A stretch of DNA of 64,000 nt from Magallana gigas (GCF_963853765.1 NC_088859.1:8866001-8930000), one strand, 5' to 3'. Positions 8,758 through 61,964 are shown, numbered from the stretch's first letter. Program-made: numbers and translations. The notes: generated by a model not told the origin, from the letters alone.

Positions 8758-10780
8758 ATGTCGAGAGCGAGCTTAAAAATGATCCAAAGAAAAGTGCAGC
8801 GACAAGCATTGCCACAAGGTAAAGTACATGTTTCAAAATTTCAGTATTAGAAATAACATTGATTCATTCATCCGACAAACTAGATTCGGCGAATGGTAGT
8901 CATTTTCCATGAACAATCATTCTTATAACTGTAAGAGTTAAATTATCATGATCCACAGATATAAGTTATATGAAATAGACCAAAACAGAATGGTTGTACA
9001 GATTTAATATATTCCAGCGGTCAGACTTGTTGTCCACTATTTTCTTTGTTAACGTTGTGTAACCGTATCGATATGAAATGAACTTATTTTTTTATGTTTG
9101 ACAGATACTAGTATCTGAAGTAAACACTAATATACATGTTTGTATCAGATATGAAATATTTAAACCTTTAAAATAAGAAATAAAGAGAAATTAAGAAACC
9201 AGCAATGGTCATATAAAATCATGATATTCTCTCTTGTTAACAGTGACTCATTTCAATTTTCCCGAGAGCTCCTTGTCCGACTGGACTGCGCAACATGTGT
9301 CGAACTTTTCTTCAAAACAATTGTCTGACCGCGTGAGATACCGGAGCAAGAGAATGATACTGGACATCATAGGAGTCGGTCTGATTGGGTCTACAACATC
9401 CTTCTCCAAAACAATTCAACATTTTGCAGAAACAACTGACAGAATCAGCGACAAGGAGCCGGCGCTTATTTGGGGAACGTCTAACAAACGCACTCGACCA
9501 GGTATGGCGGCGTTTATAAACGGATCCAATTGTCATTCGATGGACTTTGACGATACTTGGCACCCTGCTACTCATCCCAGCAGCCCTATTCTCCCTGCCT
9601 TGTTTGCACTGGCAGACTTTCTACCAGAACAGTACAAACCATCGCTTGAGGACATTCTTGTAGCGTTTAACTGTGGAGTCCAAATACAAGGAGTTTTATT
9701 ACGGTGTTCATTGCAGTCTAATAATATTCCTAACAGGTACCGTTCTCTAGCTAAGAAAAATTATTATCTCAGAAAAGAATAAATATATTATTAACAAACA
9801 ACTGCAACATGACATTTTTAAAGACGGATTTTCAAAATATGTTTATTTTCAGATTACATCCCCCAGCAATAGTTGGTGTAATGGGAAGTGCTGCTGCCTC
9901 TGCGAATCTTTTAGGTCTGGAACCCAAGAAATGCCTACACGCATTATCTATTGCAGCCTCGTTTGCTGGTGCTCCAATGGCAAATGCTGGAACCCTTGCC
10001 AAACCTTTACATGCTGGCAAATCAGCCCGATGCGGGTTAGAAGCAGCTTTTCTGGCAGATCAAGGAATCGAAGGAAACGAGCGTATTCTTGACATGGAAT
10101 CTGGCTTTGGGGCATTTTTCACCGACTATGATCCATCCACTTTTTTTCAAGAATTACAAACTTCTGAAAACCTAATTCTGCACCACCAGGACATTGCTAT
10201 CAAAAGTTATCCCTGTCATCTTGGGATGCACTGGGCCATCGAGGCATCACTTCACGTCAGAAAACAAATTGTAGATCTTTATGGAAACATGGATGCCAGT
10301 TTTGTAAAATCCATTGAAATCTTTGCTCCAAAATCCAAATATATTAACAGACCGGTACCATCTTGCGAACACGAGGCAAGGCATTCGTTTCAATTCACTA
10401 CCAATTCAGCATTGATAGACGGAAAAGTATCTCCTGAAACTTTCGTCTTTGGAAATATTGAAAAAGAGAGAAAAGAATTGTTCACTTTATTACAGAAGAC
10501 AACCATTGTTCACAGAGCCGACAATAAGCCTTGCTTTGACACAATGTACGTCGAAGTTACTGTTACTCTACAAAACGGAGAGAAATTTTCTGCCAGATGT
10601 CTTGAACCAAACGGACATTGGAGAAAACCTTTAACAGACAAAAGTTTGAAAAAGAAGTTTTTAGCAAACTCAAGGTTACTTCCTGAACACCAGCAGACGA
10701 AAATCATTAAACTTGTTAGCAAGATGTCATCTTGTGATTCGACTGATGGTCTGCTGGAGTTACTTAGAACGAACATATAA
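8758..10780 (+). CDS. ACOD1: cis-aconitate decarboxylase (IRG1; MmgE/PrpD family), about 493 aa, 3 coding exons
   Basis: Exons 8758-8818, 9244-9736 and 9853-10780 join in frame at GT-AG junctions (1482 nt). Motifs DFDDTWHPATHPS, RLHPPAIVG, AGAPMANAGTLAKPLH, IKSYPCHLGMHW and KYINRP match vertebrate ACOD1, including the active-site Asp/Thr/His/His/Lys/Lys/Tyr positions. The basic N-terminus MSRASLKMIQRKVQR resembles a mitochondrial leader. An acceptor (TTGCAG ending 8726) suggests an unlocated upstream UTR exon. Confidence 0.95.
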
Positions 10781-43171: not shown

Positions 43172-46100
43172 TTAAGTGTTTAAGTTTTTTTCTTCTTCGA
43201 AAACACCATTAACCTGGGTGATGCCATTTTTATTACTTTTCGGGATTTTTCCATGTCTCTTCAACAGTGTCTCAAAAATGTTTAATATTGTAGATTTAGG
43301 AGTCAGTCCGATTCTAAAGAATGCAAGGTTTCCATTGTCGATATCACGGCAGTCTACGACGGTGGATATGGCATTCTCTCTTGATGGTCCATCACATAAG
43401 ATGCCATCACACTGAAAAAAAGATTAAATACAAATGTGAAAAAGATGGAAAAACATAATACTGTAAGATGAAGATCGCTATGACTGATACTGTTTGCAAT
43501 GTTTGTATTTTTGTACGAACATTTTGCAACCCAAGTTTTGCCAAGACTTGGGCGTGGTGGTAGGTGTCTCCCTCTCCAGTGGGATTTGCTGAAGTCACAG
43601 CCACAGGACCACATTGATCTATTAAATGGCATGTTATAGTACTGTCTGGAATTCGCATCGCAATGCTATCTGGACGACCCAAGTACTTTTCAGATTCGCC
43701 CAATCCAAAAGATTTCACCCAGTCACCTGTTTATTAACAATTGAACATTATGTACAAGCCTTTTTTCCAAGGGGTAAGCAGCTAGCATGTTAATATTTCG
43801 AAGTACCTCTCTTTAAAACAGCTGATACATTGGACGGCCATATTTCATGGAGAAAGTCCCAGAGAAGAGAACTAAACTCGTTTTTTGCAGCTTCTATTTG
43901 TCGAAAGTTCGATATCCACAGGGACATAGGACGATCATCTGCCTGTTTTTTAGACTTGTAGGCTCGCTTAAATAGTAATGTTATATGTTTTATATTTATT
44001 AAGTCATATCTCATTCTTGTTGATTAATACAAAAAAACCAACAAATAATTTTATCTGTAATGTATACGCTTGTTTTTTTAGTATCTCACTACATCAAGAT
44101 TTATACTTTTTATGACAATACGTCACAAGATGAGGATCAAGGTTTTGTTAAGGTGTTTGTGTCAATCATTTTGGTTGAATAGCATCATATCTCAATGATT
44201 TTAGTAACAAAGTTGTTAACTGCAGATCACGAATTCGAATCTGATTGGAGTACCCGATCTATTCAGGTCTTGCGTGTCATGCTTATCCGTTATAGTAAAG
44301 TAATTTTTTGTGGATGTGAGAAACTATTTCAAGGTGTAGTGAGCTACTTTAATGCAGGAAAAATTACATTAGCTCTTACAACAACCTATATGACACCCCT
44401 ACCTTTACAGCTTCTGGTTGGTTACAACACGCTACTAGAATATAAACGGTGTCGGATGGAATTCCACATATGCCACCAGTTTTAAGTTTCTCTATTAAAA
44501 AGTTAACAAAGTATAACATTATTTTAACCATAGAAAATTTAATGTACATGTACAAAAATCAAAGGTAAAATAACTACTGCAACATTAGTAGAAAAATTTA
44601 CCAGCTATTTTCCTTACACCACTTGCCCTCCTTGCAGGTGCCCATAACATCTGGTCCTTGTACTTTTGGATCTTATTGATTTCTTTTAGAGGCCTTCCAA
44701 AAGGGATTATTTCTTTGCCGTAGGTCATTTTAATAATGGACGACAGAAAAGCATATACAAACGAAATAGAAAGGGCAGTGCCAAATATCCGTTCAATCAT
44801 GTATCCATCATTGATCTCTAACACTTGCAAAAGCGTTGCTAGCAACATCAGATCAAAACACAGAAATATGCTTGTCCAAATTTTGTTAACATTTATAGAT
44901 ATACCAGCAAAAAGTAAACCTATCAATAAAAAGCTACATATGCCTACACCCAAAGACATACCTAGATCAGTTTTGAAAAGACCAAGCGACCGTAAACCTC
45001 CCCAGATTAACCAAAAGGAGGCAAAAATTAAAAAAGAAGAACTTTCAAATGTTTGTCCCCGCGAAAAACATATAAAACCAACAACAAACTGGAGGGAGCA
45101 TCCGTACGTTATAATCCAGGGCAAAGAGAGAAACGAATTTTCTTGAGGAACCCAGACAAACGCTAGAACGGTAACAACATTTGCAAGATATCCTAGACTC
45201 TCTGATTCAGCATACTTAGAAAAGCCTAACACTGTGTTTGTTTCAAATAAGTTTTCAGAAATGTTGTTTACTCCAACTGTATTTTTCATAAATGTTTTGT
45301 TGGCAAACATCTTTGAAAGTATTTTCTCCAGCCCGTTTTGTCCTACAGGAAAATTAATTTTGAATGAAAAGGATTTACATAAATAGGATACATATCCATA
45401 AACATTCAGAATAAAAGATAACCAAGCGAAGGTTGAAACGGCAATCTTCGCTTTATTGTCAAAGTTTAAGGTCAGAATCAAGATGGAAAGCAAGAGATAT
45501 TGAAATGAAAGCAAGATTTCAGTTTGAACGAATACAACAGCTACAGATAAAACAATAAAAGATACTGGGATTGAAACAGCCGGAGAGAAAATGTCTAAAT
45601 ATTGTTTTAAGAGTTCCACGTACATGCTCCCACCCACTGAAGTCCAAAGTAGACCATCTATTATTGAGCAAGTAGATACTGTAATGTCGCCCCATCTTAG
45701 TCCAGAAAGCCCGTGAAGAAGAAGAAATAAGCCAGAAGAAAGGGGCCAAACAAAACCTGTGGTGGAGCTCTCGGTTACTGCTAAACTATTCAAGATCCAG
45801 GGTGACAGGCTGAGAGCATTTAGAGCGTACCTTATAACTCGTTTGTTTTGAAAATCAAGTTCCTCTAAGTTATTTATATTTTTTGTGAAGGAATGGAAAA
45901 ATGTTCTCGCGCTAATGTAAGACGTTATGAAGGCCAGCGATGAGAAAGTAACACTACGTCCTTTTAAATTTGTCCACATATTGGTAATAAAACAAACAGA
46001 AGACAACAATGATAAACCCATAAACACAACGTGATCTTTCTGATGGTTGAACAGGAGCAAAAGAAAGGAGAAAATTGCAAATAAAACTATAAGAACTCCG

Positions 46101-46704
46101 TGACCAGGAAGTAATACTTCCATCTGCTTAAAAGTTTCTTCTGAGATATTTTGTGATAACATAGGAGTGATTTCCTTGGATATATCTGACATTCCCATAG
46201 CTGACCAGAATGCACAGGTAATAAAAACTACAGAGGATGTGAGAGCGACATCCTTGGACGGTAAGGTGACAACTGAAAAAAAAAATATCGAGTAAAACGT
46301 TAGCACCAGCTGCGCAAAAATTCCTGTTTGTTGAAGGTAAAATAAATAAGAATTGTTTTTTTTTCAAGAATTTACTCTAGTGCTTAAAGATATATTGAAC
46401 CTAGAATTGAAATAATTAAAACGAAAATAAGATGATTTTGGGGAGGAGGAGGGTAAAATACCACAAACACGAATAAACAAGTAGTTAGTATTTTATATTT
46501 CTAACACTGTATGTAAAACAAATAAAAATGAAAATTTAATTACATACCACTTATAGCTGAAAGAACAGCTAATACCACGGTCACTATTCCTAAGACCAAA
46601 GGTTTCAGTAAGTATAATCCCGTTATTTCTAAAGCTATGTAGTCTATCGTTTGTAACACATAGGCTATACTCAAAGAGAGCAAAGAAAAAGCAATGCTCG
46701 ACAT
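43172..46704 (-). CDS. SatP/Gpr1/Fun34/YaaH-like multi-pass membrane region fused to a YrdC/Sua5 domain (paralogue A), about 840 aa, 6 exons
   Basis: Exons 46704-46548, 46272-44602, 44491-44403, 43966-43807, 43726-43521 and 43411-43172 splice in frame (2523 nt). AceTr-like motifs YAESESLGYLAN and YGCSLQFVVGFICFSRGQTFESSSFLIFASFW. YrdC motifs PSDTVY, MRIPDS, TSANPTG, STVVD and FRIG, but KKQ replaces KxR. Confidence 0.85.
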
Positions 46705-47019
46705 GTTTAATGTTTTATTGAACTGTCTGAGCGTATATTCTGTGATGTAGATTTAATAGTTCTGAAGTTGAGGGGCGGAGCAAAATTTTATTGTACAAAT
46801 ACATCTGATAACACGAAATTGACATTTAAATTTCCAGTGATGATTATTTTTTTTTCTGCTCTTCCTAGTAGCCTTCTTGCGATTCGTTGGTCAAAGAATT
46901 TATATAAATAGGTATGATGCACTCCATTTGTTTGGAATTACTTAACTGAAGCAGAATCGAGTATAAAGACATTATTGAAAGAAGTGTTGATTGGTGAATA
47001 GAGAAAGTTACTATCGCAT
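46705..47019. promoter_or_regulatory. Putative bidirectional promoter shared by the two SatP-YrdC paralogues
   Basis: Only 315 bp separate the divergent predicted start codons. GC box GGGGCGG at 46772-46778. Transcription starts were not determined. Confidence 0.6.
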
Positions 47020-50000
47020 ATGGAGAAAGGGAAAGCTACGAGCGGGCGCTCTGAGCCTTTTCCAGGCATCTTGTACTCAGAACCAGGAGCTTTAGGCCTA
47101 GTATGCAACATAATTGCGGCATTCATTGCTGCTGTCAACAACATACAAGGAGATGAAAAAGGAACTAAATTAACGGCGATTGTGACCGGTAATTATTATT
47201 TAGAGGTGTTAATTGATATTTTTTTTTAATCAAAATCAGATAGAATTGTACACTTTGTTACAAATTAGAATGTTTTGGTTTGTTTAAGTGATATCCTGAA
47301 TACGATAAATATATGTATTTTGAAGTTATTTCTGTTTGTGATTCATTTTTGGAAAAATAATAAAAACAATTTAAGATGCTGAACAAAGACTTTAAATATT
47401 GATTAAACAATGAACAGAAAAAAATAGATAAGGAATTTATACTTTTTGAAATTTTGATTTATTTGGCAGACCTAAAAATCAACTAAATCTCGCATAAACC
47501 TCGTATTGTTTTGTAGGACTCCATTTAATTCTGGTCGGCGGATTTCTTCAGATTACAGCTGGAATTATGAGTTTTCGAAAAAATGACCATCTCGTGGCTA
47601 CCTCCTTAACTGTATTTGCCACACTTTGGGCATTTCAAGGCGGGGCAATTATTCTATCGAAACTCATATACAGTGATGTAACAAAATCAGTTCTTCCGGT
47701 GTACATTGCTTTCGTTACAATTGCGTTTTCGTTATTTATTTGTTCAATATTTGTAAACTTCATAGTCCCTCCTGTATTGGTTGCTATGGCACTGACTCTG
47801 ACATTTGAGTCGATAGGACTCTTTTTCACCTGGGGTAAGAAGACAGCTGTTGCTTTTGAGTTTTTGATAGTTCTGACTGCTATGTATGCTGTAACGGTTA
47901 TGAAAACAAAAGGCATCAGTCAGCGCTACATATTACCAGGTTTCGGTAACGCACCAATTGACCCCCTTCTAATAAAGAGAAACGCAAGCAGAACGAATAA
48001 AAAGGAAAAACGAAAGAATACAAAATATGCTGAACCTATGGGTATGGGTTACATGGGAAGTATCATTCCCGTTTCTGTTGTTTGTTTTCACGGGCTTGGG
48101 TATGTTGACGACATGACGGTGCCCATCTTAGCTGTTAGTTGTGGTGCACTGCTGCAAATAATTGCCAGTTATTACTCTTTTCTTCGAGGTGATCTCTTGT
48201 ACTCCGTACAATTTTTAACACATTTCCTATTCTGGACCTCAAAATCGCTGGTCTATCAATTTTCTGGCAGTGCTGATAGTTTTTCTTCATATGCCAACTT
48301 TTATGGTTCATGGGGTTTAGTTTTGGTTTTGGCTTTTTTCACAATATGTTCATCAACGCAATCAATCGCCGTGTTTCTTTATAACTGCTTATTAACAGTA
48401 ACTTCTATTTTGTCAATGGAACATATTCCTTTGTCAATTCAAAACTATACATTTGGGTTGTCTGCAATTTTGATATGGTTATTCACTGTTTATCTTTCGA
48501 CCGCTCATCTTCTGAATGCATGCGCAGAGAAGCCCGTTTTACCGCTTGGGTCAGAAATTACCACCGAGGAGCGCCTCTTTGGCTGTTGCTTAAAGAAAAA
48601 GTAAGAATAATAAAATGTTCAAACTTTTATTTTCCCAATTTAAGATGATACATGTATATATTCGCTTTGCACAAATACTTGTATATTCATTTTTCATATG
48701 TTTCAGTAATGCAAAGGAAAGTCGGTCCATGACAGACGAAGACATAGACAATGAAAGAAGAGATCAAACGAACAATGTGCTGTTGTTCCTTTGCAACATG
48801 GTAGCCTCATTTGCCCTATCGCCATTCGAAATATCTAATCGAATGATGTCATTGCCATTTCTATTGACAGCTGGAATCTTTGGAAATTTATTGGTGGCAC
48901 GTTTTTCGTACGTCCTGCAGAGTCTCTCGCGATGCTTCATTGCTTTGTCTTGTTGTTTTCTTTGGACATCATGGTCACTGTACATCTTTGATGGTAAACT
49001 TAATGTATATTAACCGCGTGTAAATTGTATGTTGATCAAGTTGTATTAGAGTTCCATTTGATTTTTAACCAAAATTTCAATGAACAAATGACTTTATAAT
49101 AAAAAGTGCCTGCTTTTGTCTTTGAAGCTACAGGGATTGCCATCAGCAGTTCTCTGGCCATTATTAGCGTCGGACTGTGTGTGCTCTCTCTATTGTTGTC
49201 CATCACAATGGCCAAGATTTTCACAGTGTTAGAATTAGCCATTCTTCTTCACTCCATCTCTTTTACAACACACATGTTTAACGCTGATACCAAATACTTC
49301 CCCATGGTTTCATCCATTTTTCTAGGTAAGTTTCCAGTCGTTTTATAAGTCCGATTATATATGTAATTATATCAGTTTTATAATGCATAATGAATTCAAA
49401 TCTTTTCCTCGATTCTTACAGGTCTGGTTGGCATATATGGGCTCATCTTATACACTGTGAAGGGGCTATTGGACAAGACTTTGCTTCCAGAGGGCAAACC
49501 TTTGATAAAGGTAATCATGAGTTTTGTTTGTGTACCATTAGTTAGTGTTTCACGAGTAAGAAAAAAAAACAATCAACCAAAACGTTTTGCGATGTCTGTG
49601 AAAATTTCAAATTTTTCCTACTGGTTTTCTTAAAGATGAGGACACCAATCACGTCAGCTTTACCTTGCCCCATCTTCCGGTCACGAATTGCTAGTGATCT
49701 ATTTAAAGCTGCCAAGGTACTTGAAAAGGGTGAGGTTATTTGTGTTCCCACTGACACAGTGTATGCTTTAGCTGGATCCTGTAGCCAACCGGATTCTATC
49801 TCCAAAATCTATCACATTAAAGGGAGACCGCCAGAGAAGCCGATATGCCTTTGCATATCTAACCTGCAGCAACTCAGAGTAGCTAATCCACCTTTTAGGT
49901 AACACTTATCATACAACAGATGTACTACTTCTACTACTTAAACAATTTTTGCCAAAAATCCTTCTATTTGTTTAAACTTTGAAACAGATTTAAGCACGTA

Positions 50001-51546
50001 ATGTTTTGCCTAAAACACTTCTAAAATGTTGATGGTTGAAGACTTTTGTCTAAATATTTAAAGTCTTAATATATATTTTACGCTGAAGTACGTCATTTGA
50101 ATTCTAGTCCATTGTTATGGAGATTCATGGACAAGTGTTACCCTGGAGGCATTACTTGTGTCGTTAAAAAGGGTCCTTGGCTACAAAATCTTGGAGTAGG
50201 CGAGGCAGCAGACTTCGTGGGAACAAAAGAAAGCGTGGCAATCCGGGTACCTGACAGTTCCGTTCTCTCATACCTTGTTAGCATCACTGGCCCTTTAGCC
50301 ATCACGTCAGCCAATCCAAGCGGGGAGCCTGACAGCACACACCACAATACTGTCCTCGATACACTAGGTATAAATAAAACATTCAATTTGCTGTAGAGTA
50401 CCCCACTCTAATGTAATCATACTTTGAAAATCCGTTAACGGTCATGATTGATCTTGTATAGTTGTTTATTTGGTTTTACTAGTCATTTTATTTGTCACAG
50501 TAGATGCTGAATGCGGAAGGTTTTTCCTCATTGCTCCATCTTACATTCTTCAAATGTTCCAATTTTGATTTTTTTAAGTCTTAAAACCCGAGCTTAATAA
50601 TTTAATTCTTGTATTAGACGTGAAGCCTAGAACTTAAAATTTATGTAAACTAAAGTTGTATGCAAAGTTAAATGTTTCTCTTTTTTAATTGTGTTGTGCA
50701 TAAAAGTGGAAAAAAAACAATACCAGTAAATAGCTTAATACAAATACTTGTACAACTATATGTATACCCATAACGATCTTTTTATACACTATTTATAACT
50801 TTAGAAATTATTTGTATCAATATAATGTTAAATAAACAATAGGATGGGCCATCATTACCTCTAGTGCTAACACGTGTACTTTGTGGGTGTTTTAGGAGGG
50901 AAGCTAGCAGGGGTTGTATGTGATGACGAGTCCAATGAGACAGTGGCGTCCACTGTAGTCAACTGTATGAAGATTGACGAAGGTAAACAAATGCCACATT
51001 GTTTCCTCGTGCCCTTTTCCTATTATTTAAGAGGACTCGATGACCATTGCCATTTTTATGCTATATTGATCTCCTTAAGAAGAAGAGCTCTATATGAAAA
51101 TATAGGAGAACACCTTTTGAAAAAATGAAATGCATGGGTTTTTTTCTTCACTTACTAATGGGTTTGAGATAAACAAATCATATGCTAAAATTTCACGTAG
51201 AGCTGGTGGTCAATTTGCTGACCATCAAGCCTCCTTAAAATCTGATCACATTGTACACAGCCAATAATTATGAATTATATCTACTTAGAGAATTATTTGA
51301 TCTTTTGTATGTTGTGTAGTACATTGTGTACTACATTTAAATGCATAATATTTGTCATGATCAATGAATTAAACTTTGAAGTGTTTGCAAGGTTACATTC
51401 ATATTTTCGTATGCTGTATTTCAGAAATATTTTTATTTTGTATTGCAGGGCTAATTTCGTATTTTCGAATCGGGTGTGTACCGAAGGACATCGTCGATAA
51501 TTTGTTTGATGAAGTAAAAAAAGAACAGTCTGATCAGATAAACTAG
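47020..51546 (+). CDS. SatP/Gpr1/Fun34/YaaH-like multi-pass membrane region fused to an intact YrdC/Sua5 domain (paralogue B), about 844 aa, 9 exons
   Basis: Exons 47020-47188, 47517-48600, 48707-48993, 49128 (or 49134)-49325, 49422-49510, 49636-49898, 50108-50367, 50896-50982 and 51449-51546 splice in frame (2535 nt). AceTr-like YSEPGALGL..GGFLQITAGIMSFRKND..ATLW and YAEPMGMGY..GALLQ..RGD..FLFW. YrdC motifs PTDTVY, KGRPPEKP, IRVPDS, TSANPSG, STVV and FRIG. Confidence 0.87.
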
Positions 51547-52054
51547 ATTACAACGCAACAACCCTTTAGAACATTAAAGTGAAACTTCATTTCCGAAGAG
51601 AAAATATAATATTAAAAAACTCCTACTTTATTTTTCTATTGCTTTTATTTGTTGCAACAATATGAGTATAAAAAATGAATAATTTATGATTTTTTTAAAT
51701 TGATGTTATTCTCCGGATAAATTTATTAATAACTGGTTGTTTAAAAATCGTATAATTATAGCTCTATACATAAATCAAAGATGCCTCAAGCAAAGAAGTA
51801 ATAAAAATGACCATACAAACATTACTTTATAATGATTTTTTGTGGCTATGCCTGTATATGCCACGGCTGCTAACAATAAGAGAGGTAGGCATCAATTATT
51901 GTATTGAGCAATGCAGTGCATTATTATTGGGCATCCGCAACAAGCAAGAATAATGAGTCCTGTGCACAGATGCTCACATGCTTGATCACATAGTATATAT
52001 TAAAACAGGAAACAGGTGCACTACTGGTGAGCCAAATAGACGCCATGAGACTAT

Positions 52055-53725: not shown

Positions 53726-57855
<4,130 letters not shown>

Positions 57856-59850: not shown

Positions 59851-61964
59851 GTGCAAAATATCTTACAGGAGAGTGTACCATCAAAACTCTCATCAACCAG
59901 ATTTCACCAGGCATGGATAACGAGAGATATTAAGAGACTATCAAGACGAAAGAAAAGGAGCTTCATCAAAGCACGTAACACCAACAATAAGGCCGACATC
60001 AAAAGATACCAACGCCTAAAAAAACTAACAGAAAAAGAATGTAAAACAGCATATAAGAACTACATCGAGGACATGATCAGCCCTGAGCTAACAAACAACC
60101 CAAAGCGATTCTGGAGCTTCATAAAGAGCAAACGATGTGAAACAACAGGAGTTGCTCCACTCAGAGACACAGATGGCTTAACTTACTCAGATGGGAAGTC
60201 CAAAGCAAACATCTTAAATCAACAATTCTCCTCAGTCTTCAACAGTGATGAAGATGTAAGTACCATTCCAGATAAAGGGCCAAGTCCACACCCTGCCATG
60301 GATAACATCACAGTGACAGAGAACGGAGTGTGTAAACTGCTACGTAACTTAAACATCCATAAAACAAGTGGCCCAGATGAAATACCAACTCGACTTATTA
60401 AAGAACAAGCAGAAAATTTAGCTCCAATTTTTACAACATTCTTTCAGGCCTCCATTACACAAGGAAAATTACCATCAGACTGGAAAGAGGCAAACGTAGT
60501 TCCAATCTTTAAAAAAGGAGAAAAGTGCAAAGCTGCCAACTACAGACCTGTTTCTCTCACAGTAGTCATATGCAAGGTCCTAGAACACATAATATGCAGT
60601 AGCATTTCCAAACATCTGGAAAAACATGGAATTCTCACTGATGCCCAGCATGGATTTAGAAAGAACAGATCATGCGAGTCCCAATTGATCCTGACAGTCC
60701 AGGACCTAGCCAAGAGTATGGATCTCGGGAAACAGACGGACCTTATCCTTTTGGACTTCTCCAAAGCCTTCGATAAGGTCCCCCACGAGCGATTACTATA
60801 CAAGGCAATGTATTACGGAGTAAGAGGGTCCACACTCCAATGGATTAGGGACTTCCTCAGTGGAAGGAACCAGCGAGTAATAGTTGATGGGAAGAGCTCC
60901 AACAATGCCCCCGTCCAGTCAGGAGTCCCTCAAGGGAGCGTTCTTGGCCCGCTGATGTTCCTCCTCTTCATAAATGACCTCCCAGAATATGTCCATCAAT
61001 CCAATGTTAGACTTTTCGCTGATGATTGCGTACTAGTACTCTATCGTAATATCTGTAACAACACTGACACTATTAAACTACAAGAAGATCTCAATAGTTT
61101 ACTACAGTGGGAAACAGACTGGCAGATGGAGTTCCACCCCAGCAAATGCCAACTGCTGAGAGTCACCAACAAACGAAAACCTGTGACCAACTCCTACAAC
61201 ATCCGTGGACACAGGTTAGAAGTCGTGGACTCTGCCAAATACCTCGGGGTTACCATCCACAAGAACCTCAGATGGAACGAACACATTGATAACATCACTA
61301 AGAAAGCAAACTCCACCAGAGCTTTCATTCAACGCAACTTGCAGCACTGCCCACGTAATACCAAGGCAGCATGCTATACAACAACTGGTAAGACCCTTAG
61401 TGGAGTATGCATGTACTGTGTGGGACCCACACACAGCCCTTAACATCCAGAAACTGGAGGCAGTACAACGACGATCGGCTCGATTTGTGATGAACAACTA
61501 CTCACAAACTAGCAGTGTAACATCAATGCTTGAAATTCTCCAGTGGACATCCTTGGAAGAACGTCGAGCCAGAAACAAAGCTATAATGATGTACAGGATA
61601 GTGCATGGACTAGTAGCTATTCCATCAACTGAGTTACACCCAACGATGACTTCAGCCAGAGGCCACACAAACAGATTCCTGATTCCCTATGCTAGGACCT
61701 TATTATATAAGCATTCCTTCTTCCCAGATAGTATCAGGATCTGGAACAACTTGCCACAGAGAGCAGTGGACAGTACCTCCCTGGATGAATTCCGACAGGA
61801 GGTCCTGGCATGCAGTCTACGTTAGAGCACCACCAACTTTTACCCGGTTTTAATCTCACCTGCACTGTATATACATGCACTTGTTGTCACACCGAGCACA
61901 AGCCGAAGTGCGATGATACTCCAAGGAGTCCTGCACTTTATTGGAAGAAGAAGAAGAAGAAGAA
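59851..61964 (+). mobile_element. 5'-truncated CR1-group LINE (reverse transcriptase region) with (GAA)n tail
   Basis: RT motifs QHGFRKNRSC, LDFSKAFDKV, GVPQGSVLGP, FADD and KYLGV. +1 frameshift near 61384. C-terminus HSFFPDSIRIWNNLP. 3' UTR ends in (GAA)7 at 61944-61964. No endonuclease domain. Confidence 0.92.

What the first reader, a model, noticed from the sequence alone, without database searches (positions are those of the whole stretch)
47020..51546. Unusual domain fusion: tandem SatP/AceTr carboxylate-channel repeats joined to a catalytically intact YrdC/Sua5 domain
Seen: about 600 aa of hydrophobic helices with at least two AceTr-like repeats (EPxxLG..GGxxQxxxG..F..W), then a YrdC domain retaining PTDTVY, KxR, RxP and TSAN. 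Established: AceTr (SatP/Ady2/Gpr1) proteins are acetate/succinate channels mainly of bacteria, archaea and fungi. YrdC/Sua5 makes threonylcarbamoyl-AMP from Thr, bicarbonate and ATP, and is normally a small soluble t6A enzyme. Inference: a membrane-tethered adenylating enzyme coupled to its own channel could activate a non-tRNA substrate and export the product (vectorial synthesis). This would be a new YrdC function.
Basis: partly seen in the sequence, partly recalled or inferred. Interest (0 to 1): 0.82.

Follow-up and report, generated by a model that had tools for sequence, protein, structure and literature searches.

The report
Oyster acetate-channel–YrdC fusion gene
This oyster gene really does encode one protein with three acetate-channel-like membrane modules joined to an intact YrdC enzyme domain, but the family was published in 2026; it lies in a conserved, infection-linked gene cluster with the itaconate-making enzyme.

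Summary
Window 47020-51546 (+) holds a 9-exon, all GT-AG gene for an 844-aa protein. It has three six-helix AceTr/SatP-like repeats, not two, followed by a YrdC/TsaC-type domain with an intact active site.

RNA contigs from three studies carry all eight splice joints. These include the joint linking the last membrane exon to the first YrdC exon, so the fusion is one transcript.

The architecture is not new. Ghasemi et al. (iScience 2026, PMC13316224) described "three Ato domains + Sua5/YciO/YrdC" in non-mammalian vertebrates. This gene is the oyster orthologue of the zebrafish si:ch211-153b23.3 type.

- The fusion occurs in at least 20 molluscs, in amphioxus and in an MMETSP eukaryote transcript.
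- Molluscs form one clade, and four introns are shared with chordates, including the one at the fusion junction. This argues for vertical descent rather than horizontal transfer.
- A head-to-head paralogue (43172-46704, -) belongs to an ancient second clade that has lost the Arg of the KxR motif.
- The genes sit beside IRG1/ACOD1-type genes in oyster, amphioxus and catfish.
- The zebrafish genes of the same names are induced 16- to 66-fold by Shigella infection, alongside irg1l.

Best reading: an immune-linked carboxylate channel with a cytosolic adenylating domain. Its substrate is untested. The scan's earlier notes concern this same window only.

The parts
46947..47019 (+). 5' UTR of gene A (minimum extent). 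It lies in the ~315-bp interval between the two divergent start codons (46704 and 47020), a presumed bidirectional promoter region.
   Evidence: RNA contig X2 record 4 starts at 46947 and continues into exons 1 and 2. The gene B start codon is at 46704.
47020..47188 (+). Exon 1: start codon and the first helix of AceTr-like repeat 1 (EPGALGL motif).
   Evidence: Gene model. Splice joint 47188|47517 is present in three RNA runs.
47517..48600 (+). Exon 2: the rest of repeat 1 (to about 47932), the conserved basic linker, and all of repeat 2 (about 48029-48532).
   Evidence: Repeat 2 aligns to SatP 5ZUG residues 5-188. NCBIfam AceTr_1 gives E 3.3e-5 for repeat 1 and 7.4e-6 for repeat 2.
48707..48993 (+). 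Exon 3: linker and the first half of divergent repeat 3.
   Evidence: Joint 48600|48707. AF2 helices 428-513.
49128..49325 (+). Exon 4: middle of repeat 3. The RNA uses the acceptor AG at 49126-27.
   Evidence: Joint 48993|49128 in three runs.
49422..49510 (+). Exon 5: last helix of repeat 3 and the conserved P-x-G-x-P-x-x-K end of the membrane part.
   Evidence: Joints 49325|49422 and 49510|49636. The junction alignment across 24 fused proteins is.
49636..49898 (+). Exon 6: start of the YrdC domain (PTDTVY, KGR). The phase-0 intron before it is the membrane/YrdC junction.
   Evidence: PF01300 8.8e-16. The junction intron is shared in position and phase with scallop, catfish and amphioxus.
50108..50367 (+). 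Exon 7: core of the YrdC domain (RVP, TSANPSGEPDSTHH).
   Evidence: PF01300 4.9e-12. Joint 49898|50108.
50896..50982 (+). Exon 8: YrdC strand carrying the ASTVV motif (equivalent of Sua5 Ser181).
   Evidence: Joint 50367|50896 in X1 and X2. Residue mapping.
51449..51546 (+). Exon 9: YrdC C-terminus (FRIG, equivalent of Sua5 Arg195) and the stop codon. The 3' UTR continues to at least 51819.
   Evidence: Joint 50982|51449. Contigs reach 51803-51819.
43172..46704 (-). Head-to-head paralogue, gene B (clade B, si:ch211-153b23.4 type). Six exons: 46704-46548, 46323-44602, 44491-44403, 43966-43807, 43726-43521, 43411-43172. Product 857 aa with the same architecture, but the KxR motif reads K-K-Q.
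   Evidence: tblastn and homology-guided model. Exon 1 is in RNA contigs of all three contig runs. Tree placement. R58 is Q or L in all six clade B sequences tabulated and Q in gene B.

Best explanation
Shown here. The locus is one real gene and one transcript. It encodes the oyster member of the bilaterian 'Ato x3-YrdC' family, clade A, named si:ch211-153b23.3 in zebrafish and catfish. The protein has three SatP-like six-helix channel modules in one chain. A C-terminal TsaC/YrdC-type domain follows, with the full ATP-binding tetrad and four of five threonine-contacting residues.

Inferred. The three modules form half of a SatP-like six-module ring. The ring is completed by a second chain, either another copy or the co-transcribed clade B paralogue next door. 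The protein acts as a small-carboxylate or anion channel, with the enzyme domain on the cytosolic face.

The gene family is physically linked to IRG1/ACOD1-type cis-aconitate decarboxylase genes in oyster, amphioxus and catfish. The zebrafish genes of the same names are co-induced with irg1l by bacterial infection. The most likely role is therefore in innate-immune carboxylate metabolism. The channel would move itaconate (methylene-succinate) or a related small anion across a membrane. The YrdC domain would use ATP to activate a carboxyl or carbamate group on the cytosolic side; the substrate is unknown, and Thr plus bicarbonate remains possible. It is probably not the housekeeping t6A enzyme.
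For: One transcript: all eight GT-AG joints, including 49510|49636, occur in RNA contigs of three studies, and one contig spans exon 2 to the 3'UTR.

Family membership:
- Full-length collinear orthologues at 41-69% identity in bivalves, gastropods and cephalopods.
- All 10 long representatives found with the membrane profile carry PF01300. They include teleost b23.3 and b23.4, amphioxus and an MMETSP transcript.
- The tree places gene A with b23.3, amphioxus and molluscs.
- Four introns are shared with chordates.

Channel fold:
- SatP 5ZUG at E 1.3e-10.
- Foldseek to SatP at target-normalised TM 0.75-0.81.
- 18 helices in three groups of six.

Enzyme:
- PF01300.
- TIGR00057 at 119.1 bits.
- Best solved relatives are TsaC/Sua5 at E ~1e-17, against 1e-3 for YciO.
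- T35, K56, R58, R121, S143, N145, S147, G148, S181 and R195 (Pa-Sua5 numbering, PMC6004061) are invariant or nearly so across clade A.

Immune and itaconate context:
- MmgE/PrpD, PhyH and Glyoxalase genes lie in the same window.
- MmgE/PrpD is head-to-head with the fusion in catfish and amphioxus.
- The same B/A/glyoxalase order occurs in scallop.
- This synteny was noted independently under the label 'YrdC' in 10.1101/2022.06.17.496652.
- Zebrafish Shigella infection: b23.3 log2FC 6.04, irg1l 5.81, b23.4 4.05, acod1 3.79 (PMC6980646 Table S2).
Against: - No transport or enzyme assay exists for any family member.
- The AceTr signature is altered. NPAPLGL reads EPGALGL in repeat 1 and EPMGMGY in repeat 2, and is lost in repeat 3. 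The constriction Phe is Asn, Ser or Asp in all three repeats. The pore may conduct something else, or nothing.
- The retained threonine-binding residues fit ordinary TC-AMP synthesis at least as well as a new substrate.
- In the oyster the ACOD1-like gene is about 36 kb away with repeats in between, and animal gene neighbourhoods often carry no functional meaning.
- The authors of the IRG1 synteny study saw 'no obvious functionally related clustering'.
- Induction by infection was shown in zebrafish, not in oyster.
- Subcellular location is unknown.
- Whether the oyster has a separate canonical YRDC was not established.
Confidence: 0.55

Rival explanations
1. Housekeeping enzyme on a membrane anchor. 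The protein is simply the oyster's t6A threonylcarbamoyl-AMP synthase (YRDC orthologue), and the channel-like part serves only to localise it.
For: The active site is that of a TC-AMP synthase: the KxR/SxN tetrad plus T35, R121, S181 and R195 are all kept. TIGR00057 scores 119.1 bits, just under the 123.2 equivalog cut-off. No canonical short YRDC from a mollusc appeared among the hits to the YrdC part, although that search only sees proteins sharing 5-residue words.
Against: - The family is reported absent from mammals, which make t6A (PMC13316224). From general knowledge, non-mammalian vertebrates carry it in addition to the canonical yrdc gene.
- It forms its own clade at about 60% identity between oyster and vertebrates, higher than I would expect for YRDC orthologues.
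- The zebrafish gene of the same name is induced about 66-fold by infection, which is not housekeeping behaviour.
- It sits in an IRG1 cluster.
- The 600-aa membrane part is itself under strong constraint, with 60 invariant columns from oyster to shark.
Confidence: 0.1
2. Regulatory-domain model. The YrdC domain no longer works mainly as an enzyme. It binds ATP, threonine or bicarbonate, or hydrolyses ATP slowly, and so gates or regulates the channel.
For: The sister clade B has lost the essential Arg of KxR in every member examined (Q or L; Q in gene B). It has nonetheless kept the domain and the rest of the pocket since before the protostome-deuterostome split. This shows the domain can be retained without canonical catalysis. 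Nucleotide-binding domains attached to channels are commonly regulatory (general knowledge).
Against: In clade A, every catalytic and ATP/PPi-contacting residue tested is invariant or nearly so across molluscs, fishes and amphioxus. This is the pattern expected for a working enzyme. An active A chain paired with an inactive B chain is an equally good reading of the clade B loss.
Confidence: 0.2
3. The YrdC domain adenylates a non-tRNA substrate, and its own channel exports the activated product.
For: An intact adenylating site is covalently tied to a channel. The published paper also speculates that transport and enzymatic conversion are coupled.
Against: - Eighteen helices put both termini on one side of the membrane.
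- The lysine/arginine-rich inter-repeat linkers (for example NKKEKRKNTK) indicate the cytosol under the positive-inside rule.
- SatP-type pores pass acetate-sized anions (general knowledge of 5ZUG/5YS3). An AMP conjugate is far too large.
- Acyl- or carbamoyl-adenylates such as TC-AMP are short-lived (general knowledge).
- Coupling in the import direction, or supply of a small anion to the enzyme, is more plausible than export of the product.
Confidence: 0.05
4. Artefact. Two adjacent genes (a membrane protein and a small YRDC starting at the Met of exon 6) were read as one.
For: Exon 6 begins with ATG, and the intron before it is phase 0.
Against: - The exon 5 to exon 6 splice joint is present at full depth in three RNA studies, and single contigs cross it.
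- Among the 24 fused proteins aligned, the residue at that position is Met only in the three oyster sequences. It is E, P or A in 20 of the other 21, and that row's alignment is disturbed there; the flanking linker is conserved.
- The same junction intron exists in scallop, catfish and amphioxus.
- Contig depth is similar on both halves.
Confidence: 0.02

Closest known systems
Vertebrate Ato-related family with three Gpr1/Fun34/YaaH domains fused to Sua5/YciO/YrdC (Ghasemi et al., bioRxiv 10.1101/2025.05.26.656167; iScience 2026, PMC13316224). Gene names si:ch211-153b23.3 and si:ch211-153b23.4.
   Same: - Same architecture: three six-helix modules plus a C-terminal YrdC domain.
- Same size class (844 aa against about 877-900 aa).
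- Two clades.
- The oyster gene groups with the b23.3 clade, and its neighbour with the b23.4 clade.
- 36% full-length identity to catfish b23.3, and 58-67% across the YrdC exons.
- Four shared intron positions.
   Different: The paper describes the fusion as vertebrate. [quoted passage not shown]

Here the fusion is found in at least 20 molluscs of three classes and in amphioxus. Molluscs are monophyletic and lie outside the vertebrates, and introns are shared. The fusion and the A/B duplication therefore predate bilaterian divergence. The paper does not mention the IRG1 linkage or the loss of KxR in one clade.
Bacterial succinate-acetate channel SatP/YaaH (PDB 5ZUG, 5YS3, 5YS8) and fungal Ato1/Ady2 (AceTr family, PF01184).
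   Same: Each of the three repeats has the six-helix SatP fold (Foldseek TM 0.75-0.81). Repeat 2 aligns over the full length of SatP at E 1.3e-10. The Q of GGxxQxxxG and the FW of YGxFW are kept.
   Different: - Three modules in one chain instead of a homo-hexamer of single modules.
- The signature NPAPLGL is changed to EPGALGL and EPMGMGY.
- The constriction Phe is replaced by Asn, Ser or Asp in all repeats.
- The window protein itself falls below the Pfam and NCBIfam thresholds.
- An enzyme domain is appended.
TsaC/YrdC and Sua5 threonylcarbamoyl-AMP synthases (PF01300, TIGR00057; PDB 6F87, 9DSQ, 1HRU).
   Same: Same fold (Foldseek E 8e-10 to P. abyssi Sua5). The KxR/SxN tetrad and the Thr-contacting T35, R121, S181 and R195 are kept. 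There is no SUA5 extra domain, so it is TsaC/YRDC-type.
   Different: - Tethered to an 18-helix membrane domain.
- H67 is Cys and N62 is Lys.
- Just under the TIGR00057 equivalog cut-off (119.1 against 123.2 bits).
- Expression of the zebrafish genes of the same names and the genomic context are immune-type rather than housekeeping.
Genes syntenic to pIRG1/IRG1L (VOC, YrdC, 2OG-Fe(II) oxygenase, GAT) reported in 'Evolutionary Adaptations of IRG1...' (bioRxiv 10.1101/2022.06.17.496652).
   Same: The window holds MmgE/PrpD (ACOD1-like), a PhyH-type oxygenase, the two 'YrdC' genes and a glyoxalase/VOC gene. This matches the syntenic set reported there for eastern oyster, amphioxus and vertebrate IRG1L.
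   Different: That study labelled the gene only by its YrdC domain. It did not recognise the channel part and concluded there was no obvious functional clustering. A GAT/DJ-1 gene was not looked for in this window; one lies beside b23.4 in Astyanax.

Membership tests
AceTr / GPR1-FUN34-YaaH (PF01184) | Six-transmembrane-helix bundle per module with the SatP fold | tested here: met
   AF2 gives 3 x 6 helices. Foldseek to 5YS3, 5ZUG and 5YS8 gives target-normalised TM 0.75-0.81, prob 1.00.
AceTr / GPR1-FUN34-YaaH (PF01184) | Significant sequence match to the family | tested here: met
   The window's exon pieces gave no Pfam hit at E<=1. P0028 repeats 1 and 2 gave sub-threshold NCBIfam AceTr_1 hits (24-26 bits against a 50-bit cut-off).

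The orthologue profile hits SatP at E 1.3e-10 and true PF01184 proteins. Orthologues P0004, P0014 and P0018 pass the gathering score. Repeat 3 gave no family hit on its own in NCBIfam; it aligns with the other repeats and canonical AceTr sequences.
AceTr / GPR1-FUN34-YaaH (PF01184) | Signature NP[AV]PLGL motif and the Phe/Tyr/Leu pore constriction | tested here: not met
   The motif reads EPGALGL in repeat 1 and EPMGMGY in repeat 2, and is absent in repeat 3. The Phe position is Asn, Ser or Asp in all repeats. The Tyr position is F in repeat 1, H/Y in repeat 2 and L/C/Y in repeat 3. The Leu position could not be placed reliably.
AceTr / GPR1-FUN34-YaaH (PF01184) | Hexameric ring assembly and carboxylate conduction | not testable with these tools
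   Only single-chain prediction was available, and no assay. A dimer of three-module chains is a hypothesis (also proposed in PMC13316224).
TsaC/YrdC/Sua5 TC-AMP synthase (PF01300, TIGR00057) | YrdC alpha/beta fold and a Pfam match above threshold | tested here: met
   PF01300 at 58.3 and 46.1 bits on the two exon pieces, against a 25.1-bit cut-off. Foldseek to Sua5/TsaC2 at E 8e-10 to 4e-8.
TsaC/YrdC/Sua5 TC-AMP synthase (PF01300, TIGR00057) | KxR / SxN tetrad essential for ATP binding | tested here: met
   K671, R673, S764 and N766 are invariant in clade A. The motif definition comes from PMC6004061.
TsaC/YrdC/Sua5 TC-AMP synthase (PF01300, TIGR00057) | L-threonine-contacting residues (Pa-Sua5 T35, H67, R121, S181, R195) | tested here: inconclusive
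   Four of five are kept (T650, R743, S802, R819). The H67 equivalent is Cys682 in clade A and Trp in clade B and the outgroup.
TsaC/YrdC/Sua5 TC-AMP synthase (PF01300, TIGR00057) | Score above the curated equivalog cut-off | tested here: not met
   TIGR00057 scores 119.1 bits against a cut-off of 123.2. TsaC type 1 (NF007919) scores 53.1 against 175. The first is a marginal miss.
TsaC/YrdC/Sua5 TC-AMP synthase (PF01300, TIGR00057) | Makes TC-AMP and supports t6A formation | not testable with these tools
   This needs an enzyme assay or sua5 complementation.
Ato x3-YrdC family (Ghasemi et al. 2026) | Three consecutive six-helix Ato domains, a C-terminal YrdC domain, and a length of about 900 aa | tested here: met
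   844 aa with 18 helices plus a YrdC domain.
Ato x3-YrdC family (Ghasemi et al. 2026) | Phylogenetic grouping with the vertebrate members | tested here: met
   Gene A groups with b23.3, amphioxus and molluscs (99*). Gene B groups with b23.4 and molluscs (100*). This is a quick IQ-TREE search, midpoint-rooted, and gene B is a long branch. Shared introns support the grouping.
IRG1/ACOD1-linked syntenic gene set | Physical linkage with an MmgE/PrpD (IRG1-type) gene and with VOC and 2OG-oxygenase genes | tested here: met
   Oyster window: MmgE/PrpD at 9234-10780, a PhyH exon at 14763-15062 and a glyoxalase exon at 54562-54765. MmgE/PrpD is directly adjacent in catfish and amphioxus.
IRG1/ACOD1-linked syntenic gene set | Co-induction with IRG1 by immune stimuli | not tested
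   Shown only for the zebrafish genes named b23.3 and b23.4, in a published table. Not examined in oyster.

The most novel reading that the evidence does not exclude
The catalytically intact A chain and the KxR-deficient B chain are transcribed from a shared bidirectional promoter. They assemble into a hetero-dimeric, six-module SatP-like ring. This ring is the dedicated channel for itaconate, or for an itaconate-derived metabolite, in non-mammalian animals. Its YrdC domains chemically activate a carboxyl or carbamate group. The whole forms part of an ancient animal metabolic gene cluster retained from before the protostome-deuterostome split and lost in mammals: IRG1-type decarboxylase, PhyH-type oxygenase, VOC/GLOD5, possibly a DJ-1/GAT gene, and the two channel-enzyme fusions.
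Probability: 0.2. Interest if true: 0.85.

Novelty: new member of a known kind. Interest (0 to 1): 0.55.

Why it matters
Two separate reports can now be joined. One describes an unexplained channel-enzyme fusion (Ato x3-YrdC). The other notes an unexplained 'YrdC' gene that travels with IRG1/IRG1L. They are the same gene family.

That gives the orphan fusion a testable setting in innate-immune itaconate metabolism. It also gives the itaconate field a candidate channel in the many animals that make itaconate.

The mollusc, amphioxus and intron evidence corrects the published view that the fusion is vertebrate-specific, with protostome copies possibly acquired horizontally.

The pairing of an intact A copy with a B copy lacking the KxR arginine has persisted since before the protostome-deuterostome split. 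This suggests a hetero-oligomer with one active and one regulatory enzyme domain.

Tried and rejected
- Pfam on the separate exon products found no AceTr hit at E<=1. This looked like a refutation, but orthologues, a family profile and the fold search reversed it.
- My first acceptor for exon 4 (49107) was wrong. The RNA uses 49128.
- The raw-read run X21 gave only one read (about 1 in 100 of the run was sampled), so strand, transcript ends and levels could not be read. All RNA evidence comes from contigs.
- I looked for a canonical short YRDC in molluscs with the word search on the YrdC part. Only fusion-clade sequences and bacterial TsaC/Sua5 came back. Because that search needs shared 5-residue words, this says nothing about absence.
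- The search of earlier findings for threonylcarbamoyl, Sua5, t6A and TsaC found nothing in this genome's notes.
- Papers naming si:ch211-153b23.3 or b23.4 are only differential-expression lists.
- No paper links 'YrdC domain-containing' with oyster.
- Mapping the third constriction residue (SatP Leu131) was abandoned because HMMER and MAFFT disagreed by about 3 residues.
- Model coordinates are not exposed, so the distance between the YrdC active site and the pore mouths could not be measured.

Full report
**1. What is in the sequence**

The window is AT-rich (GC about 0.33) and intron-bearing. Public RNA runs that hold the stretch are labelled as oyster. On the + strand, 47020-51546 assembles into nine exons with GT-AG at every intron and one open frame. 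The exons are 47020-47188, 47517-48600, 48707-48993, 49128-49325, 49422-49510, 49636-49898, 50108-50367, 50896-50982 and 51449-51546.

My first choice for the exon 4 acceptor (49107) was corrected to 49128 by the RNA contigs. This gives an 844-aa product. That product differs at 7 residues from database protein P0028 (844 aa, 373 member sequences). I used P0028 as a reference for tools that need an id.

**2. Is the fusion real?**

Yes. RNA contigs from three independent studies (X1, X2, X9) carry the predicted joints. The joint 49510|49636 links the last membrane exon to the first YrdC exon and is present in all three. The last two joints are present in X1 and X2. A single 2671-nt contig runs from exon 2 through every later exon into the 3'UTR. 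Contig depths are similar on the two halves.

Exon 6 starts with ATG, which could suggest a separate gene. In 24 full-length relatives aligned, that residue is Met only in the three oyster sequences. It is E, P or A in 20 of the other 21, and the flanking linker (P-x-G-x-P-x-x-K, then ...PC-x-x-x-S-R) is conserved.

The raw-read run gave only one read. Transcript ends and strand therefore rest on the gene model, not on reads.

**3. The membrane part**

Hydropathy analysis and AlphaFold2 (mean pLDDT 84.1, pTM 0.73) give 18 helices in three groups of six. These are residues 22-194, 231-393 and 428-596. There are thus three repeats, not two.

The window's own exon pieces give no Pfam hit. NCBIfam AceTr_1 is sub-threshold for repeats 1 and 2 of P0028 and silent for repeat 3. 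Homology to the AceTr family is nevertheless secure:
- Close orthologues pass the PF01184 gathering score on repeat 1 or repeat 2.
- A profile of 24 membrane parts (A1) matches E. coli SatP 5ZUG over its whole length at E 1.3e-10.
- Among 1.84 billion representatives, the same profile finds only 269 proteins at E<=1e-3. The ~200-aa ones tested are all genuine PF01184 members.
- Foldseek matches the model to SatP structures at target-normalised TM 0.75-0.81.

The pore signature differs from SatP. NPAPLGL has become EPGALGL in repeat 1 and EPMGMGY in repeat 2. The constriction Phe that follows it is Asn, Ser or Asp in all three repeats.

The loop between repeats 1 and 2 (KGISQRYILPGFGNAP...EKRKNTKYAEP) is almost invariant from oyster to shark, yet it is modelled with low confidence. 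An even helix count and basic linkers place the linkers and the YrdC domain in the cytosol. This is an inference from the positive-inside rule and from SatP topology.

**4. The YrdC part**

PF01300 is found in exons 6 and 7. TIGR00057 (L-threonylcarbamoyladenylate synthase) scores 119.1 bits, just under its 123.2 cut-off. The best solved relatives are archaeal and bacterial TsaC/Sua5 (E about 1e-17 to 1e-18). YciO is far weaker at about 1e-3. The fold search agrees.

I used the HMMER alignment to P. abyssi Sua5 and the residue roles given for that enzyme (PMC6004061). The ATP/PPi residues K56, R58, S143, N145, S147 and G148 are present. So are the threonine contacts T35, R121, S181 and R195. 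All are invariant or nearly so in the clade A sequences tabulated. H67 is Cys and N62 is Lys. The site looks catalytically competent and still threonine-compatible.

**5. Relatives**

Full-length, collinear fused proteins (766-916 aa, 41-69% identity) occur in oysters, pearl oyster, scallops, limpets, abalone, many snails, octopus and argonaut. All ten long, more distant representatives found with the membrane profile also carry PF01300. They include:
- teleost 'si:ch211-153b23.3' and 'si:ch211-153b23.4';
- amphioxus proteins;
- mollusc proteins of a second type;
- an MMETSP marine-eukaryote transcript.

Shorter vertebrate entries named 'threonylcarbamoyl-AMP synthase-like' or 'YRDC protein, partial' (birds, frogs, sturgeon, fishes) are about 60% identical in the YrdC part. 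The longer ones inspected carry pieces of the membrane repeats at their N-termini.

**6. Already published**

Ghasemi et al. (bioRxiv 10.1101/2025.05.26.656167; iScience 2026, PMC13316224) describe this family. Their account includes:
- three six-helix Ato domains plus Sua5/YciO/YrdC;
- two vertebrate clades;
- absence from mammals;
- a SatP superposition;
- a dimer-to-hexamer idea;
- the speculation that transport and an adenylating reaction are coupled.

That paper says the YrdC domain is absent from protostome clades. It also says the few protostome sequences within the vertebrate clade may reflect horizontal transfer. My data disagree:
- In a 31-sequence tree (quick IQ-TREE search, midpoint-rooted), the molluscs form one clade with a class-level structure like the species tree. 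They lie outside the vertebrates in both paralogue clades.
- Four of the eight oyster introns are shared in position and phase with scallop, catfish and amphioxus. These are at reference aa 57 (phase 1), 514 (phase 1), 609 (phase 0, the membrane/YrdC junction) and 813 (phase 1).

The fusion and the A/B duplication therefore predate the protostome-deuterostome split.

**7. The neighbour**

Head-to-head with gene A, with start codons 315 bp apart, lies a six-exon gene on the - strand (43172-46704, 857 aa). It has the same architecture, and its first exon is present in the same RNA runs. It belongs to clade B together with fish b23.4 and other mollusc copies.

All six clade B sequences tabulated have lost the Arg of KxR (Q in fishes, L in the other molluscs). 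They keep the rest of the pocket. Oyster gene B reads K-K-Q at this motif. The same B/A head-to-head pair occurs in scallop. An intact chain and a KxR-deficient chain kept together for this long suggests a hetero-oligomer. This is inference.

**8. Genomic and expression context**

The window also holds:
- an MmgE/PrpD (IRG1/ACOD1-type) gene at 9234-10780;
- a PhyH-type oxygenase exon at 14763-15062;
- a glyoxalase/VOC exon at 54562-54765.

In channel catfish an MmgE/PrpD gene is head-to-head with b23.3. In amphioxus an MmgE/PrpD gene is head-to-head with one fusion gene, which is followed by a second. In scallop a glyoxalase gene follows gene A, as in the oyster. In Astyanax a DJ-1/PfpI gene lies beside b23.4.

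[quoted passage not shown] It did not recognise the channel part or infer a shared function. It also shows that oyster pIRG1 is haemocyte-enriched and induced by poly(I:C).

Zebrafish larvae infected with Shigella sonnei (PMC6980646, Table S2) give these values:

| Gene | log2 fold change |
|---|---|
| si:ch211-153b23.3 | 6.04 |
| irg1l | 5.81 |
| zgc:174917 (PHYHD1-like) | 5.68 |
| si:ch211-153b23.4 | 4.05 |
| acod1 | 3.79 |
| glod5 | 0.65 (padj 0.50, not significant) |

**9. Interpretation**

Shown:
- one gene and one transcript;
- three SatP-fold modules;
- an intact TsaC-type site;
- ancient, vertically inherited A and B clades;
- conserved linkage to IRG1-type genes.

From the literature: co-induction with irg1l in zebrafish.

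Inferred: this is a channel for a small carboxylate or anion working in innate-immune carboxylate metabolism. Itaconate is methylene-succinate, and SatP conducts succinate and acetate, so itaconate is a candidate substrate. The cytosolic YrdC domain would adenylate a carboxyl or carbamate substrate there.

The housekeeping-t6A reading is unlikely but not excluded for the oyster. I could not search the rest of the genome for a canonical YRDC.

**10. Verdict**

The gene is a new member of a published family. The added value is the mollusc and intron evidence, the A/B active-versus-degenerate pairing, and the joining of the fusion family to the IRG1 gene cluster.

The scan's earlier notes on this topic (s1-395811, s1-395870, s1-395833, s1-395881) are on this same window. 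Nothing was found on other DNA.

Noticed in passing
window 43172-46704 (-): Paralogous AceTr x3-YrdC gene B (857 aa, six exons), head-to-head with gene A. Its KxR motif reads K-K-Q, and the same arginine is lost in every clade B relative examined, including fish si:ch211-153b23.4. It is either a conserved pseudo-enzyme or a specificity variant.
   Followed up: yes
window 9234-9782 and 9809-10780 (+): An IRG1/ACOD1-type gene (MmgE_PrpD N and C domains) read as two ORFs only 26 nt apart. This is a very short intron, a frameshift or an assembly slip; I did not resolve which.
   Followed up: partly
window 14763-16533 (-) and 54562-54765 (-): Exons of a PhyH-type dioxygenase and of a glyoxalase/VOC (GLOD5-like) gene flank the region. 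The zebrafish PHYHD1-like gene zgc:174917 is induced with irg1l and b23.3 on infection, whereas glod5 is not.
   Followed up: partly
window 51062-51418 (inside intron 8 of gene A): Low-depth RNA contigs lie inside the last intron. One carries a non-canonical joint 51107->51219 (GA..GC), and several have loose ends that continue into unrelated sequence. This could be a repeat, an antisense transcript or an unannotated exon.
   Followed up: no
window 47160-47545: In run X9, a contig at about one seventh of the exon depth covers intron 1 unspliced, with 6 substitutions and 3 indels. It could be retained intron, genomic DNA in the library, or another haplotype.
   Followed up: no
window 48707-49300: Run X2 holds a second set of contigs with 7 or more substitutions in exons 3-4 at about 40% of the depth. 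This suggests two haplotypes or pooled individuals. P0028 also differs from the window at 7 residues.
   Followed up: no
gene A protein aa 188-230 (window about 47911-48037): The loop between repeats 1 and 2 (KGISQRYILPGFGNAP...EKRKNTKYAEP) is nearly invariant from oyster to shark, yet AlphaFold models it with pLDDT below 50. It is a candidate interaction or regulatory motif.
   Followed up: no
window 21475-22059 (+) and 59851-61443 (+): A DDE_3 transposase ORF, and a reverse-transcriptase ORF (RVT_1, 530 aa) in a local GC peak of 0.44. These are mobile elements between and beside the cluster genes.
   Followed up: no
L004 (amphioxus) 17109-20748: Amphioxus has a second fusion gene (924 aa) in tandem after the first, on the same strand. 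The first is head-to-head with the MmgE/PrpD gene. The arrangement therefore differs from the bivalve head-to-head A/B pair.
   Followed up: partly
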